IMG/VR virus record: IMGVR_UViG_3300030041_000009
Coordinates: 124,001 to 188,000 of that record
Reading direction: 5' to 3' (one strand)
Length of the DNA: 64,000 nucleotides
This document shows positions 629-21,502 of this stretch, piece by piece (position 1 is the stretch's first letter; every line of letters begins with the position of its first letter). The notes under the pieces were generated by a model. The model made no database searches and was not told the origin of the DNA. It saw nothing but the letters and a program-made list of their open reading frames with translations. The position numbers and the translations under genes were made by a program.

Positions 629-887
629 TTTTAATGAAGGTGATAAAATATTATGTAAAAAAGATTTAATAGCTAATTATAGTACACATTTTATAGAATG
701 TAAATATTATATTTATCATAAAATTCTGAATGATTCATTTAAAGGTTTTGCCTGCTGTATATTTAATGAATCTAATGGAATATATCCATATTTTTTAAAT
801 AAAAATGAATTACTAAATCATTTTTATACTAAACAAGAAGAGAGAAAAATTAAATTAGAAAAACTTTATGAAGAATCAGAATCTTAA
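621..887 (+). CDS. Tandem paralog family protein
   Basis: Close paralog of 130..396. Confidence 0.8.
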   Translation: MNNFNEGDKILCKKDLIANYSTHFIECKYYIYHKILNDSFKGFACCIFNESNGIYPYFLNKNELLNHFYTKQEERKIKLEKLYEESES

Positions 888-1140
888 TGTAGGTGATAAG
901 TTATTGTGTAAAAAAAATTTAAATGAATTATATGCAAGTTTTAATAAAAATAAATATTATATTGTTTATGATATTAAATTATTTGACAATAATACTGATT
1001 ATTGTTATTATATAGAATTTGATAAAAAAAAATATTATTCTTTTAGATATAGCGTTAGATTTTTTTATGAACATTTTTATACTAAACAAGAGGAGAGAAA
1101 AATAAAATTAGAAAAACTTTATGAAGAAACAGGATATTAA
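868..1140 (+). CDS. Tandem paralog family protein
   Basis: NVGDKLLCKK / FYTKQEERKIKLEKL. Confidence 0.8.
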   Translation: MKNQNLNVGDKLLCKKNLNELYASFNKNKYYIVYDIKLFDNNTDYCYYIEFDKKKYYSFRYSVRFFYEHFYTKQEERKIKLEKLYEETGY

Positions 1141-1387
1141 TGATGAAGATAAATTATTATGTAAAAAAAATCTTCTAGTTGGAGCAAATAAATATTTATA
1201 TGTTGATAATTATTATATTGTTATGGTAGTATACGGTCCTTATGAATATTGTTATTATTTTAATGATGAAAATGATAGAATATTACCATTTTCATTTAGC
1301 ATAAAAGAGATGTCTGAACATTTTTATACTAAACAAGAAGAAAGAAAAATTAAATTAGAAAAAATTTATGAAGAATCAGAATCTTAA
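1121..1387 (+). CDS. Tandem paralog family protein
   Basis: Same conserved termini. Confidence 0.8.
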   Translation: MKKQDINDEDKLLCKKNLLVGANKYLYVDNYYIVMVVYGPYEYCYYFNDENDRILPFSFSIKEMSEHFYTKQEERKIKLEKIYEESES

Positions 1388-1631
1388 TGTAGGAGATAAG
1401 TTATTATGTAAAAAAGATTTAACAACATCATATTCAATATATCATAAAGATAGATATTATATTGTTCATTTTATTATTAATTATGATGATGATTATCAGT
1501 ATTTGATATCTGATGATAAAAATGCTTATTCATCTTTTAAACGTGATGAAGAATATTTATATACTTATTTTTATAGAAAAAATGAGATTAGAAAAATTAA
1601 ATTGAAAAAATTGAATAATATTTTTAATTAA
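1368..1631 (+). CDS. Tandem paralog family protein
   Basis: Same conserved termini. Confidence 0.8.
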   Translation: MKNQNLNVGDKLLCKKDLTTSYSIYHKDRYYIVHFIINYDDDYQYLISDDKNAYSSFKRDEEYLYTYFYRKNEIRKIKLKKLNNIFN

Positions 1632-6996: not shown

Positions 6997-9294
6997 ATGA
7001 AATTAGAAGAAATTGTATCAAATAGTAGTGGAATATCATTAATAACTCATTCAAAAGCAGTTAAAAAAATAGGAATGATGTTATCAAAAAAGTTATCATT
7101 AAATGAAGACCTTGAAAAACAAATTTCAATAGCTTGTTTATTGCATGATTTAGGTAAATGTAATTTAGATTTTCAAAATTATATAAAATCAAAAAGTAAA
7201 ACAATTTCTTTTATTAATTCTCCAATATTTCATCATGAAATAAGTTGGGCATTTGTGTCATGTATTTTAAATAATGATGAATATAGATATTCTTTAGATT
7301 CAATATATTGGCATCATTCTAAACCAAAAATAAATTATATAAGTAATGATAATATATCATTAATTTTAAGTGATATGTGTGATGATGATAAAAAAAATAT
7401 TTTATCAATGTATAATTTTTTAATGAATGAAAATATATTATTTGAAGATATAAATTTTGAAAAATCTATCAATACTCCATTATATTATTTAAATGAACCA
7501 AATAGTTTAACAAATTCTAAAAATTCATTAGTAAGATCTTGTGTTATAACTGCTGATAGACTTGTATCAGCATCAGATCAAGAAAAAATATTGTATGATG
7601 ATGATTATTGTGAAGAATTAATAAACAATTTATCATATAAAGATACTAAAGTATATAGCAAACCTATTAATTATGATTCTATTCGTTTTGATTCTCAAGT
7701 TGATTACGCAAATCAATCATTAAATAATCGAACTACAATAATGAAAGCCCCAGCCGGTTTTGGTAAAACATTATTGGGGTTATTATGGTCATTAAAATCT
7801 AATAAAAAATTAATATGGGTATGCCCTAGAAATATTATTGCTGAAAATGTATATAATTCTGTTTTACAAGAATTAAAAAATATATCAGTTGAATTATCAG
7901 TTGAGTTATATTTAACAGGTAATAGACAGAAAACAAATAATGAAAACACTAAAGAATTTACATCTGATATTATAATAACTAATATAGATAATTATTTATC
8001 TCCTAATGTGAATAATTCTATTAGAAATAGATTATTTGTTATTAATTATTGTGATGTGATTTTTGATGAATATCATGAATTAATTAAAGATGATGCACTA
8101 TTTGCATGTTTTATTAATATCATGAAATCTAGACATATGTTAACAAATAGTCACACATTATTATTAAGTGCTACACAAACTATAATGGAATATTTATGGG
8201 ATGGAACAAATATAGATAAAAAAACTAAAATTTTACCAAATAAAAATTCTCATTATACATCTGCACATAATGGTAAATATTTGATTAATTATATTGATGA
8301 TATTGATACAATAACTAATGAAAAAGATTCAGTTGTTATTATGAATTCTATTTCAAATTCTCAAAGATTATATTGTTATAAAAAAGGCGATATTTTAATA
8401 CATAGTAGATATATAGATTCTGATAAAGAAAAAATAATGAATAAAATTATTCATTTATATGGCAAAGAAAATAAAAATATTTTGAATAAAGATAGTATTA
8501 TATCAGCACCTATTTTACAAGCATCTATGGATATATCATTTTTAAATTTAACAGATAGTGTGATGTCTCCAGAAACTACTTTACAAAGAATAGGTCGATG
8601 TGATAGGTGGGGACATTTTTATTATAAAAAAAATAAAACTCCAAAAATAAATTTATTTTTTAATGAAAATAAAAGTGAATTTAGAAACTCAGAAAACACT
8701 AGTATATCAAATCAATATGATTTAGAATTAAATAAATTATGGATTTCATTTATTAAAAAACATATTATTAACGGAAATTTATATTCAATAAATGAATTAT
8801 ATGAATATTATAATATGTTTAATAATGAAAATAATGAAAATTTAAAAAAGTTTATCACATCTAAACTAAAAACAAGTTTATTAAATTTATGTAAAATTGA
8901 ACCGTATAAGATGATGGAGAAATCTAAAAACAATACAATTAAAAATAATAATACTAAATTAAGAAGTGGAGGAGATATATATTGTATATATAAATATGCA
9001 AAAAAAAGACAAATGACGGACTCATTTAGTGTAGATTTTAATCGAGATATTAAAAAATCTGAACCAATAACAGGTTTAGATAGTAAAATTAAGAGAATAA
9101 TAAAGAATATTATAAAAATTAAGGATGATAGATTTTTTTATAATAAATATTCGTTATTTAAAAATAATCAATATACTTTACCTATACTTAAAGATTATGC
9201 CAGGAAAAAAGAAACCCCATATATTGCATTTGATAAAGTTTATTGTGAAAAATTAGGATTAGTAAAAAATGATATTTACGATAATTTAATATAA
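6997..9294 (+). CDS. cas3: Cas3 HD nuclease-helicase (no N-terminal Cas2 fusion)
   Basis: HD motifs HS, LLHDLGK, HHE, WHH, AD; SF2 motifs APAGFGKT, DEYH, SAT, HSR, QRIGRCDR; follows array. Confidence 0.95.
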   Translation: MKLEEIVSNSSGISLITHSKAVKKIGMMLSKKLSLNEDLEKQISIACLLHDLGKCNLDFQNYIKSKSKTISFINSPIFHHEISWAFVSCILNNDEYRYSLDSIYWHHSKPKINYISNDNISLILSDMCDDDKKNILSMYNFLMNENILFEDINFEKSINTPLYYLNEPNSLTNSKNSLVRSCVITADRLVSASDQEKILYDDDYCEELINNLSYKDTKVYSKPINYDSIRFDSQVDYANQSLNNRTTIMKAPAGFGKTLLGLLWSLKSNKKLIWVCPRNIIAENVYNSVLQELKNISVELSVELYLTGNRQKTNNENTKEFTSDIIITNIDNYLSPNVNNSIRNRLFVINYCDVIFDEYHELIKDDALFACFINIMKSRHMLTNSHTLLLSATQTIMEYLWDGTNIDKKTKILPNKNSHYTSAHNGKYLINYIDDIDTITNEKDSVVIMNSISNSQRLYCYKKGDILIHSRYIDSDKEKIMNKIIHLYGKENKNILNKDSIISAPILQASMDISFLNLTDSVMSPETTLQRIGRCDRWGHFYYKKNKTPKINLFFNENKSEFRNSENTSISNQYDLELNKLWISFIKKHIINGNLYSINELYEYYNMFNNENNENLKKFITSKLKTSLLNLCKIEPYKMMEKSKNNTIKNNNTKLRSGGDIYCIYKYAKKRQMTDSFSVDFNRDIKKSEPITGLDSKIKRIIKNIIKIKDDRFFYNKYSLFKNNQYTLPILKDYARKKETPYIAFDKVYCEKLGLVKNDIYDNLI

Positions 9295-20645: not shown

Positions 20646-20849
20646 ATGAAAGAATTAATAGATGATACTCAGGTTCCAGATAGAGGATATTATTATTTAT
20701 TAGATTGGAATGAAGCCGATAGATGGGAAACTATGCTAAGATTATTTGATAAAAAAAGATTATGTGATTTGGAATTACATGAATATATTCAATTATTCGA
20801 AATTGCAACAAAAAAAGATTTAGAAAATTTAAAAATAGAAAAAACTTAA
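20646..20849 (+). CDS. Hypothetical protein
   Basis: ORF track. Confidence 0.6.
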   Translation: MKELIDDTQVPDRGYYYLLDWNEADRWETMLRLFDKKRLCDLELHEYIQLFEIATKKDLENLKIEKT

Positions 20850-20895
20850 TAAAATTATATTACTATATACATTACAAACAAAAATTAAAATTCTT

Positions 20896-20949
20896 ATGAA
20901 TAATAATATTTCAAACATGATTCAGCAACAACAACAAACTTACGTTTGA
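20896..20949 (+). CDS. Gln-rich leader peptide MNNNISNMIQQQQQTYV
   Basis: CAG CAA CAA CAA CAA run; stop codon overlaps antiterminator arm; precedes two tRNA-Gln genes. Confidence 0.75.
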   Translation: MNNNISNMIQQQQQTYV

Positions 20950-21033
20950 TTGGGTTAGAGTCATGTCTGTTTTTTACCCAATCCTGAAATGGTTTGGGTT
21001 TTTTTGTGCCCAACATTTTATGTTGGGTTTTTT
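20916..21033 (+). promoter_or_regulatory. Transcription attenuator with two tandem terminators
   Basis: Antiterminator GATTGGGT(20948-55)/ACCCAATC(20976-83); terminator 1 at 20976-21005; terminator 2 at 21008-21033. Confidence 0.75.
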
Positions 21034-21043
21034 GTTAATATAC

Positions 21044-21129
21044 TGCCTTGTGATGGAATTGGCTAAACATTTCAGTCTTTGAAACTGATGCTCATTGTGA
21101 GCTTGTGGGTTCGAACCCCACCAAGGCGA
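21044..21129 (+). tRNA. tRNA with TTG (Gln) anticodon on a class II long-variable-arm body
   Basis: Acceptor TGCCTTG/CAAGGCG, anticodon arm TCAGT-CTTTGAA-ACTGA, variable stem GCTCA/TGAGC, T-arm GTGGG-TTCGAAC-CCCAC; CCA not encoded. Confidence 0.85.
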
Positions 21130-21135
21130 CAATAT

Positions 21136-21206
21136 TCTTTCTTGATGTAATGATAGCATATCATTTTCTGACAATGAATGACTAAGTTCAAATCTTAGAG
21201 AAAGAA
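21136..21206 (+). tRNA. tRNA-Gln(CTG), AT-rich
   Basis: Acceptor TCTTTCT/AGAAAGA, anticodon arm TCATT-TTCTGAC-AATGA, T-arm CTAAG-TTCAAAT-CTTAG; D-loop has GA instead of GG. Confidence 0.75.
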
Positions 21207-21207
21207 C

Positions 21208-21244
21208 AAAAAAATCCTGAAATTTAAATTTCAGGATTTTTTTT
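21208..21244. terminator. Bidirectional terminator after tRNAs
   Basis: Perfect palindrome AAAATCCTGAAATTTAAATTTCAGGATTTT. Confidence 0.7.
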
Positions 21245-21502
21245 ATAATCATTATAGAATTTAAGATATTCTTCATCTGTTTGTTTATTAAATTTCATTT
21301 GGTACATTAGAATTTGTCCTAATTCAGCTCCAGATAATTCACCTGAATCAAATCCAAGTTCTTTTATAATTTGGAAGATAGTTTTATTTTTCATATCTTC
21401 TTTACTTGTAGTTCTAAATTTAAACTCTAATTCAATTGCTAATTTTTTAATTTTTTCAGGAATGTTATATTCGAAAAATTCATAAGTTTTAATAAATTTC
21501 AT
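21224..21502 (-). CDS. Hypothetical protein with N-terminal MKFIKTYE tag
   Basis: ORF track. Confidence 0.65.
   Translation of the reverse strand: MKFIKTYEFFEYNIPEKIKKLAIELEFKFRTTSKEDMKNKTIFQIIKELGFDSGELSGAELGQILMYQMKFNKQTDEEYLKFYNDYKKNPEI

What the first reader, a model, noticed from the sequence alone, without database searches (positions are those of the whole stretch)
20976..21033. Domino two-terminator design in the attenuator
Seen: a second terminator GCCCAACAT-TTT-ATGTTGGGT with a U-run (21008-21033) follows the first. When the antiterminator sequesters ACCCAATC, the freed TTGGGT (20994-99) can pair with GCCCAA (21008-13) and disable terminator 2 as well. Inference: one stalling event switches off both terminators, giving tight repression and a steep response.
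Basis: partly seen in the sequence, partly recalled or inferred. Interest (0 to 1): 0.6.

Follow-up and report, generated by a model that had tools for sequence, protein, structure and literature searches.

The report
Two-terminator Gln attenuator before phage tRNAs
A huge peat-soil phage puts a tiny glutamine-rich leader gene and two back-to-back transcription stop signals in front of its own glutamine tRNA genes, and the RNA is built so that one stalled ribosome could plausibly disarm both stops; this is a new twist on the classic amino-acid attenuator, but it has not been tested at the bench.

Summary
At 20976-21033 two intrinsic terminators sit in tandem: T1 (20976-20999, U7) and T2 (21008-21028, U6). 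The 3' arm of T1 is complementary to the 5' arm of T2.

They belong to a complete leader-peptide attenuator:
- Leader ORF 20896-20949 (MNNNISNMIQQQQQTYV*). It holds the only run of five Gln codons in the 214.5 kb genome.
- A protector hairpin and an antiterminator.
- T1 and T2, then, 10 nt later, tRNA-Gln(UUG) and tRNA-Gln(CUG). There is no room for a promoter between T2 and the tRNAs.

The domino idea is physically plausible:
- The bridge hairpin (20985-20999 with 21008-21020) is as stable as T2 (-11.1 kcal/mol each).
- The bridge forms first during transcription.
- In a base-pair-level Markov model it delays T2 folding from about 0.5 ms to about 9 s.

Comparative support is one-sided. Four variants keep T2, one through a compensatory pair, but nothing covaries for the bridge. 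The nearest outgroup and six other phage leaders have a single terminator.

The topology is that of the his attenuator (A:B, C:D, E:F versus B:C, D:E), with C:D upgraded to a terminator. "Tighter repression" follows from the design; "steeper response" does not. No RNA 3'-end data exist.

Verdict: a real element, a new variant of a known kind, with the mechanism inferred.

The parts
20861..20869 (+). Conserved TACTATATA box, a candidate promoter -10 element for the leader transcript (inference).
   Evidence: Conserved in variants A-C' and nearly so in the distant variant D, although the upstream ORFs differ. The same box precedes several other genes of the genome. Not tested.
20896..20949 (+). 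Leader ORF MNNNISNMIQQQQQTYV*, with stop TGA at 20947-20949.
   Evidence: Read. The start context is A-rich with T at -1 and no Shine-Dalgarno, like the phage's other genes. Of 5 substitution events among the variants, 4 are synonymous; the one replacement (S->L) is compensated in the protector helix. The peptide motif SNM(I/V)QQQQ is kept in variant D.
20923..20937 (+). Regulatory codons CAG CAA CAA CAA CAA (five Gln).
   Evidence: This is the only (CAR)5 run in the 214.5 kb genome on either strand. The codons match the anticodons UUG and CUG of the tRNAs downstream.
20912..20969 (+). Protector (1:2) hairpin, -17.5 kcal/mol. It overlaps the Gln codons and segment 2. It is followed by U6 (20970-20975), a possible pause site.
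   Evidence: RNAalifold predicts it independently. It has compensatory pairs CG<->UA, AU<->GC and CG<->UA.
20948..20983 (+). Antiterminator AT1 (2:3): GATTGGGT 20948-55 with ACCCAATC 20976-83.
   Evidence: -11.4 kcal/mol. Both arms are invariant in all 5 variants. The leader stop codon overlaps its 5' arm, so a ribosome at the stop covers it (sequence; ribosome footprint from general knowledge).
20976..21005 (+). Terminator T1 (3:4): stem 20976-20999 plus U7 at 20999-21005.
   Evidence: -10.5 kcal/mol. It is in the MFE and consensus folds. It is invariant in 5 variants and is the only terminator in variant D.
20985..21020 (+). Bridge / anti-T2 hairpin (4:5): 20985-20999 with 21008-21020. Its core is TTGGGT 20994-99 with GCCCAA 21008-13.
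   Evidence: -11.1 kcal/mol in the window and -8.8 in variants B, C and C', in a shifted register. The core is invariant with no covariation; the extension pair 20990:21015 is broken in the other variants. First passage to T2 takes about 9 s from the bridge and about 0.5 ms without it.
21008..21033 (+). Terminator T2 (5:6): stem 21008-21028 plus U6 at 21028-21033.
   Evidence: -11.1 kcal/mol. Found by the scan and present in the MFE and consensus folds. One compensatory pair, A:U->U:A (CAT/ATG versus CTT/AAG), in 3 of 4 variants. Variant C carries G->A, which weakens T2 to -7.1 kcal/mol.
21044..21129 (+). tRNA with anticodon UUG (Gln codons) and a long variable arm; it is the first regulated gene.
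   Evidence: ARAGORN. Rfam tRNA, 48.6 bits.
21136..21207 (+). tRNA-Gln(CUG), the second regulated gene.
   Evidence: ARAGORN. Rfam tRNA, 52.9 bits.
21208..21243 (.). Two-way terminator hairpin that closes the tRNA unit and the converging - strand genes.
   Evidence: Kept in variants B and C through a compensatory change TCC/GGA -> CTC/GAG.

Best explanation
The element is a ribosome-mediated (leader-peptide) transcription attenuator that sets how much RNA polymerase reads into the phage's own tRNA-Gln genes. It has six pairing segments, as the his attenuator has.

When Gln-tRNA is plentiful, or when the leader is not translated, the ribosome reaches the TGA stop and covers segment 2, or the protector hairpin 1:2 forms. 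Hairpin 3:4 (T1) then folds and terminates at its U7. Any polymerase that escapes T1 meets 5:6 (T2), which folds in under a millisecond and terminates at its U6.

When decoding of CAG/CAA is slow, the ribosome stalls on the five Gln codons. That keeps segment 1 occupied and leaves segment 2 free, so 2:3 forms and T1 cannot. The freed segment 4 (T1 loop and 3' arm) pairs with segment 5 (T2 5' arm) as soon as segment 5 emerges. T2 is then kinetically blocked while polymerase crosses its U tract, and the two tRNA genes are transcribed.

The tRNAs made should speed decoding of the leader, which would close a negative feedback loop.

T2 is a lineage-specific addition that reuses the CCCAA/TTGGG stem of T1, and that reuse is what makes it conditional.

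Shown: the sequences, energies, alternative folds, conservation and compensatory pairs of the OFF-state helices, the uniqueness of the Gln run, and the adjacency to the tRNA-Gln genes. Inferred: translation of the leader, termination at T1 and T2, and the size of the kinetic block.
For: - Anatomy and energies.
- The (CAR)5 run is unique in the genome, and the codons are cognate to the tRNAs downstream.
- No + strand promoter-like site lies between T2 and the tRNAs, and the gap is only 10 nt.
- The leader start context is typical for this phage, which lacks Shine-Dalgarno sequences.
- OFF-state helices: 95.7% of cells paired, 4 compensatory pairs, one of them in T2. RNAalifold predicts protector + T1 + T2 independently.
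- Coupling: P(T2 | T1) is 0.92-1.0. P(T2 | AT1) is 0.59 in the window and 0.013 in variant C.
- Kinetics at k0 = 1e6/s: bridge to T2 takes 9 s (A), 1 s (B) and 0.5 s (C). An open chain reaches T2 in 0.3-0.6 ms. The findpath barriers are 8.9 and 7.3 kcal/mol.
- The same class elsewhere: Gln-run leaders with one terminator sit before tRNA-Gln clusters in L019, L039, L054, L118 and GenBank LR745206.1. The enrichment has P = 7.5e-5.
- A Gly/Ala-run leader sits before tRNA-Ala and tRNA-Gly in L145.
- The his precedent for a two-hairpin register shift: PMC4046918.
Against: - There is no experimental or transcript-end evidence. The only RNA-library contigs lie outside the attenuator.
- The bridge has no covariation support. 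The compensatory change in T2 weakens it, and in variants B and C' T2 wins at equilibrium with P = 0.88-0.89.
- The bridge is only moderately improbable given base composition (P = 0.03 to 0.11), and it is expected automatically if T2 arose by copying T1.
- Variant D and six other leaders work with one terminator.
- The kinetic figures rest on nearest-neighbour energies, single-base-pair moves and an assumed k0 that is uncertain by at least ten-fold.
- It is unknown which RNA polymerase transcribes this region. Huge phages may bring their own, and it may not obey intrinsic terminators.
Confidence: 0.55

Rival explanations
1. T2 is an unconditional, leaky back-up terminator. It only caps the flow into the tRNA genes. 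Its complementarity to the T1 3' arm is a by-product of T2 being a copy of the T1 stem and has no regulatory effect.
For: - T2 is equal to or more stable than the bridge in 3 of 4 variants.
- At equilibrium T2 dominates in variants B and C' even with the antiterminator forced.
- The compensatory change preserves T2, not the bridge.
- T1 and T2 share the CCCAA/TTGGG stem and a U run, as a duplication would give.
Against: - A strong constitutive T2, 10 nt before tRNAs that have no promoter of their own, would largely defeat the attenuator.
- The bridge persists at -8.8 kcal/mol or better in all four variants and slows T2 folding 10^3- to 10^4-fold in the model.
- Variant C weakens T2 so that the bridge wins outright.
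Confidence: 0.28
2. The T2 hairpin mainly serves the tRNA precursor, as a 5' structure for stability or for RNase P / RNase E processing. It is not a functional terminator.
For: It lies 15 nt upstream of the mature 5' end of the first tRNA. In variant D, where a 69-aa ORF rather than a tRNA follows the attenuator, T2 is absent.
Against: It has all the marks of an intrinsic terminator: a 9-bp G+C-containing stem, a 3-nt loop and U6 directly after the stem. Other phage tRNA-Gln clusters carry just one such hairpin, which there is the attenuator terminator.
Confidence: 0.07
3. There is no attenuator. T1 and T2 are ordinary fail-safe terminators that end the ORF67 transcript, and the short Gln-rich ORF is a chance ORF.
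For: ORF67 (20646-20849) lies upstream on the same strand. An RNA-library contig covers 20699-20849 and stops there.
Against: - The Gln run is unique in the genome and lies directly before tRNA-Gln genes.
- The stop codon overlaps the antiterminator arm, and the protector, antiterminator and terminator form a full alternating chain.
- Leader substitutions are mostly synonymous, and the one replacement is compensated in RNA.
- The same leader-plus-terminator layout recurs before tRNA-Gln in unrelated phages.
- The tRNAs have no other route of transcription.
Confidence: 0.05

Closest known systems
his operon leader-peptide attenuator of Salmonella / E. coli (segments A-F)
   Same: A run of identical regulatory codons in a 16-17 codon leader. 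Six pairing segments, with A:B, C:D and E:F in the terminating state and B:C plus D:E after a stall, so one stall shifts two hairpins by one register (PMC4046918). The protector covers the codons.
   Different: Here the middle hairpin (C:D = 3:4) carries its own U7 and is a terminator, so there are two terminators instead of one. The codons are Gln, not His. The controlled genes are tRNA genes of a phage, not biosynthetic enzymes. The attenuator does not match Rfam His_leader.
trp operon attenuator (1:2, 2:3, 3:4)
   Same: Protector/pause hairpin, antiterminator and terminator as mutually exclusive neighbours. Sensing is through a ribosome stalled on cognate codons (textbook knowledge).
   Different: trp has four segments and one terminator. 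Here a fifth and a sixth segment add a second, coupled terminator.
Leader-peptide attenuator of pheST (phenylalanyl-tRNA synthetase operon, E. coli)
   Same: Ribosome-mediated attenuation applied to a component of the aminoacyl-tRNA supply rather than to amino-acid synthesis (own knowledge; not checked in the library).
   Different: The target there is a synthetase, with one terminator, in a cellular genome. Here the target is the tRNA itself, which gives direct product feedback.
Tandem sensors in series (tandem T-box leaders such as B. subtilis thrZ, tandem riboswitches) and fail-safe double terminators (rrnB T1-T2)
   Same: More than one intrinsic terminator in a row before or after one transcription unit (own knowledge).
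   Different: In tandem T-boxes and riboswitches each terminator has its own sensor, which gives a multiplied and steeper response. Fail-safe terminators are independent and unconditional. Here a single sensor is proposed to set both through shared segment 4.
Single-terminator Gln-leader elements before tRNA-Gln clusters in other phages (L019, L039, L054, L118, LR745206.1) and the outgroup variant D (L132/L140)
   Same: A short leader with 4-7 Gln codons, then a terminator, then 2-4 tRNA-Gln genes. In D the same antiterminator and T1 sequences are present.
   Different: They have one terminator only. I found no description of these elements in the paper library.

Membership tests
Ribosome-mediated (leader-peptide) transcription attenuators | Short leader ORF with a run of regulatory codons for one amino acid | tested here: met
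   A 17-codon ORF at 20896-20949 with five consecutive Gln codons. The run is unique in the genome.
Ribosome-mediated (leader-peptide) transcription attenuators | Intrinsic terminator (hairpin plus U tract) between the leader and the regulated genes | tested here: met
   T1 and T2. Termination itself was not measured.
Ribosome-mediated (leader-peptide) transcription attenuators | Antiterminator mutually exclusive with the terminator, and a protector hairpin that ties the antiterminator to the leader codons | tested here: met
   2:3 shares 20976-83 with T1. The protector 20912-20969 spans the Gln codons and segment 2. The states are near-isoenergetic. The protector is supported by compensatory pairs.
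Ribosome-mediated (leader-peptide) transcription attenuators | The leader is translated and the read-out depends on the supply of charged cognate tRNA | not testable with these tools
   Indirect evidence only: a start context typical of this phage and mostly synonymous change. The public runs held no usable RNA reads.
Ribosome-mediated (leader-peptide) transcription attenuators | The regulated genes are functionally tied to the sensed amino acid | tested here: met
   The tRNAs have anticodons UUG and CUG. The tie is to tRNA supply, not to biosynthesis.
Curated Rfam leader families (His_leader, Thr_leader, Trp_leader, Leu_leader and others) and T-box | Match to the family covariance model at its gathering score | tested here: not met
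   No family hit on 20896-21040. The weak Thr_leader and His_leader hits (28 and 26 bits, against cut-offs of 55 and 49) fall on the terminator after the tRNAs. There is no T-box hit.
his-type six-segment register-shift attenuator | Three hairpins in the OFF state and two shifted hairpins in the ON state that share segments | tested here: met
   1:2, 3:4, 5:6 versus 2:3, 4:5. The comparison is with PMC4046918.
his-type six-segment register-shift attenuator | Only the last hairpin is a terminator | tested here: not met
   3:4 is followed by U7, and it is the sole terminator in variant D.
Independent fail-safe tandem terminators | The two hairpins fold independently of each other | tested here: not met
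   Segment 4 of T1 pairs with segment 5 of T2 at -11.1 kcal/mol. P(T2) depends on the state of T1.

The most novel reading that the evidence does not exclude
One ribosome stall propagates through a chain of five mutually exclusive hairpins and switches off two intrinsic terminators at once. This element is the most elaborate member of a widespread, apparently undescribed class in which phages place leaders rich in cognate codons in front of their own tRNA genes, so that tRNA output is feedback-controlled by decoding speed. Class members seen here: Gln leaders before tRNA-Gln; a Gly/Ala leader before tRNA-Ala and tRNA-Gly; and possibly a leader before a phage tmRNA.
Probability: 0.45. Interest if true: 0.8.

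Novelty: new variant of a known kind. Interest (0 to 1): 0.62.

Why it matters
If true, it would show two things.

First, a sensor invented for amino-acid operons has been turned on the translation apparatus itself. A phage would measure how fast ribosomes read Gln codons and make more tRNA-Gln only when decoding is slow. Possible causes of slow decoding are a codon-usage mismatch (89% of the phage's Gln codons are CAA), loss of host tRNA, or a defence that cuts tRNA. That gives a testable answer to how phage tRNA genes are regulated.

Second, it would show a cheap evolutionary route to a tighter switch. Copying the terminator stem once yields a second stop that is automatically slaved to the first, which lowers leak without a second sensor. 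The same design rule could be used in synthetic attenuators.

Tried and rejected
- BLAST of the locus against cultured and GenBank phages gave no match.
- PHROGs gave nothing for ten neighbouring ORFs.
- A relatives search with the neighbouring 236-aa ORF, and an exact tRNA pattern, returned only 100% identical copies from sister peat samples, which are useless for covariation.
- A leader-motif scan found no further clade members (some searches were pattern-syntax slips).
- A scan of prokaryote genomes gave 106 hits. None had a tRNA downstream or a matching leader, so no host-derived homologue was seen.
- The public sequencing runs held only contigs. The two RNA libraries cover 20699-20849 and 21279-21400, not the attenuator, so nothing can be said about 3' ends.
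- A promoter between T2 and the tRNAs was rejected. The gap is only 10 nt and the scan found no + strand site there.
- Long-range pairing between the T1 loop and the terminator after the tRNAs (shared 11-mer AATCCTGAAAT) was rejected. The identity exists only in the window variant and does not covary.
- Other genetic codes give little gain in ORF coverage: 0.78 with table 11, 0.81 with TGA=W or TAG=Q at 100 aa and above. Table 11 was kept throughout.
- A Kinfold-type stochastic simulation was not feasible in the sandbox. My first exact Markov run timed out and was redone on smaller state spaces.
- In the single-terminator Gln leaders of L019, L039, L054 and L118, simple masking did not reveal a clear antiterminator. 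I read a partial one by eye in LR745206.1. Their mechanism is less certain than that of the window element.
- Literature searches found no report of attenuators before phage tRNA genes or of coupled double terminators. Absence from this library is not proof of novelty.

Full report
**Context.** The window is part of a 214.5 kb IMG/VR virus record rated about 30% complete, with 22% G+C. It encodes a Cas3-like HD-helicase and a gp32-like protein, so I take it for a very large phage. Sequencing runs that hold it are peat metagenomes. Its genes lack Shine-Dalgarno motifs (0.5% against a 5% background). Instead they have A-rich leaders with T at -1. Table 11 reads the window well.

**The observation.** At the stated coordinates there are two hairpin-plus-U-run elements on the + strand.
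- T1: stem 20976-20999, -10.5 kcal/mol, U7 at 20999-21005.
- T2: stem 21008-21028, 9 bp, 3-nt loop, -11.1 kcal/mol, U6 at 21028-21033.

Both terminators are in the minimum-energy fold of 20890-21043, which has z = -3.9. Positions 20985-20991 also pair with 21014-21020, so the whole 5' arm of T2 is covered and the hairpin reaches -11.1 kcal/mol, equal to T2.

**What surrounds it.** Upstream lies a 17-codon ORF, MNNNISNMIQQQQQTYV* (20896-20949). Its CAG CAA CAA CAA CAA is the only run of five Gln codons in the whole genome on either strand. Ten nucleotides after the T2 U run come a tRNA with anticodon UUG (21044-21129) and tRNA-Gln(CUG) (21136-21207). A two-way terminator follows. No + strand promoter-like site lies between T2 and the tRNAs, so the tRNAs can only be reached through T1 and T2.

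The pairing segments form a chain:
- 1:2, the protector: 20912-20969, -17.5 kcal/mol, followed by U6.
- 2:3, the antiterminator: GATTGGGT 20948-55 with ACCCAATC 20976-83, -11.4 kcal/mol.
- 3:4 = T1.
- 4:5 = the bridge.
- 5:6 = T2.

The leader stop codon TGA (20947-49) overlaps segment 2. From the known ribosome footprint, a ribosome at the stop hides segment 2, while a ribosome stalled on any of the five Gln codons leaves it free (inference).

**Energetics.**
- The full OFF state (1:2 + T1 + T2) is -40.1 kcal/mol.
- With segment 1 unavailable, 2:3 + 4:5 (-24.0), 2:3 + T2 (-23.8) and T1 + T2 (-22.6) are near-isoenergetic. Direct-path barriers between them are 8.7-9.4 kcal/mol. That is the signature of a kinetically decided switch.
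- At equilibrium on the RNA that has emerged when T2 is complete, P(T2) is 0.999 if T1 is formed and 0.59 if the antiterminator is formed.

**Kinetics.** I built an exact Markov model over all structures of 20985-21028 within 10.5-11.5 kcal/mol of the optimum. It uses single-base-pair moves, Metropolis rates and an assumed k0 of 1e6 per second.
- The mean first passage from the pre-formed bridge to T2 (7 or more of 9 pairs) is about 9 s.
- T2 folds from an open chain in about 0.5 ms when segment 4 is absent, as it is when locked in T1.

Polymerase needs only tenths of a second to cross the U tract, so the bridge could block T2 effectively. The absolute times are uncertain by at least ten-fold.

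**Relatives.** Six IMG/VR contigs and two metagenome contigs carry an identical locus. I found four diverged forms:
- B: L065, L135, L139, L141.
- C: L107, L142, L146, L148.
- C': L138.
- D: L132/L140, from a lake hypolimnion, 30% G+C.

On the alignment, the OFF-state helices are 95.7% paired with four compensatory pairs. One of these lies in T2 (CAT/ATG in the window, CTT/AAG in B, C and C'). One converts the only amino-acid replacement in the leader (S to L) into a kept pair of the protector. RNAalifold predicts protector + T1 + T2 on its own. Leader changes are 4 synonymous to 1 replacement.

The ON-state helices are invariant, so they neither gain nor lose support from covariation. The T2 change does break one pair of the bridge extension. 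In B, C and C' the bridge re-registers at -8.8 kcal/mol.
- P(T2 | antiterminator) is 0.88 in B and 0.89 in C'. In C it is 0.013, because a G-to-A change weakens T2 to -7.1 kcal/mol.
- Bridge-to-T2 passage takes about 1 s in B and about 0.5 s in C.

Variant D keeps the leader motif, the antiterminator and T1 but has no T2. There a 69-aa ORF and then three tRNA-Gln genes follow. So T1 is a sufficient attenuator terminator, and T2 is an addition confined to the low-G+C peat clade. T2 reuses the CCCAA/TTGGG stem of T1. A partial duplication would therefore explain both its origin and why the bridge exists. With the T2 5' arm shuffled, an equally stable bridge arises in 3% of trials.

**A wider class.** Among 114 unrelated phage loci, 4 of 23 runs of four or more Gln codons lie in the 1% of sequence just upstream of tRNA-Gln genes (P = 7.5e-5). 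These are L019, L039, L054 and L118. A 634.8 kb GenBank phage, LR745206.1, has the leader MTTTQQIQQQQINQTD*, one terminator and three tRNA-Gln genes. L145 has a leader with GG-AAAA-GG before tRNA-Ala(UGC) and tRNA-Gly(UCC). All of these have one terminator. Rfam has no family for the element, and five literature searches found no description.

**Comparison with the known.** The topology is that of the his attenuator, in which a stall replaces A:B, C:D, E:F by B:C and D:E (PMC4046918). What is different here:
- The middle hairpin has its own U tract, so there are two terminators under one sensor.
- The regulated genes are tRNAs cognate to the leader codons.
- The element sits in a phage.

Leak in the OFF state is the product of the two escape probabilities, while the ON state can stay open. 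"Steep response" does not follow. With one sensing event, read-through stays linear in the stall probability, and only two independent sensors would give a squared response.

**Limits.** Nothing here shows that the leader is translated or that transcripts end at T1 or T2. The RNA libraries that hold parts of the locus are available only as contigs and do not cover the attenuator. The polymerase that transcribes this region is unknown.

**Verdict.**
- About 0.85: this is a Gln-codon leader attenuator with two tandem terminators before the tRNA-Gln genes.
- About 0.55: the second terminator is meaningfully disabled through the 4:5 bridge.
- The main rival is that T2 is a leaky unconditional cap and the bridge a by-product of duplication.

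Noticed in passing
window 21044-21129; also more than 60 phage loci (for example L014, L039, L065, L092): The first tRNA has a Gln anticodon (UUG) but a long variable arm (87 nt, discriminator A, U1-G72). That build is normal for Leu, Ser and Tyr tRNAs, not for Gln. The same odd kind (82-92 nt) is common in phage contigs, usually beside ordinary tRNA-Gln genes. Which amino acid it carries is unknown.
   Followed up: partly
L019 3516-3640(-), L039 1892-2027, L054 4748-4870(-), L118 774-880(-), L255 (LR745206.1) 435-552: Leaders with 4-7 Gln codons and a single strong terminator lie directly before tRNA-Gln clusters in unrelated phages. The enrichment has P = 7.5e-5. A clear antiterminator was not found in all of them.
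   Followed up: partly
L145 1540-1724(-) with tRNAs at 1442-1520 and 1215-1294: A leader ending ..NIGNGGAAAAGGISF* is followed by an antiterminator/terminator pair with the same GATTGGGT/ACCCAATC stems. Then come tRNA-Ala(UGC) and tRNA-Gly(UCC): the same principle with other amino acids.
   Followed up: partly
L134 (429 kb contig), about 1290-1480(-), tmRNA at 873-1283(-): A 20-codon ORF (MLQRFDMHMIAKFSGKSSLG*) has its TGA stop abutting ATTGGGT. It is followed by a matching antiterminator/terminator pair and then a phage tmRNA gene. This could be an attenuator that senses slow translation in general.
   Followed up: no
own genome G000:C1 4949-5020 (outside the window): A tRNA with anticodon CUA (amber suppressor) sits directly behind a terminator-like hairpin. 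TAG ends only 3 of 132 long ORFs. This hints at TAG reassignment in part of the phage.
   Followed up: partly
window 6997-9294 (+): A 765-aa ORF with HD, DEAD-box helicase and Cas3 C-terminal domains, that is, a Cas3-like protein in a phage.
   Followed up: no
whole genome; window 20875-20895: The phage genes have essentially no Shine-Dalgarno motif. Instead they have an A-rich stretch at -18 to -9 and T at -1, which points to a host with SD-independent initiation, such as Bacteroidota.
   Followed up: partly
window 20980-20990 and 21212-21222: The T1 loop region and the terminator after the tRNAs share the 11-mer AATCCTGAAAT. In variants B and C the downstream terminator has changed (CTCTGAAAT) while T1 has not, so a functional long-range pairing is unlikely.
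   Followed up: yes
window 20833-20869 versus L140 9270-9310: Homology between the window and variant D begins inside the last codons of two otherwise unrelated upstream ORFs (..KIEKT*) and includes a TACTATATA box. The attenuator-tRNA unit may therefore move as a cassette with its own promoter.
   Followed up: partly
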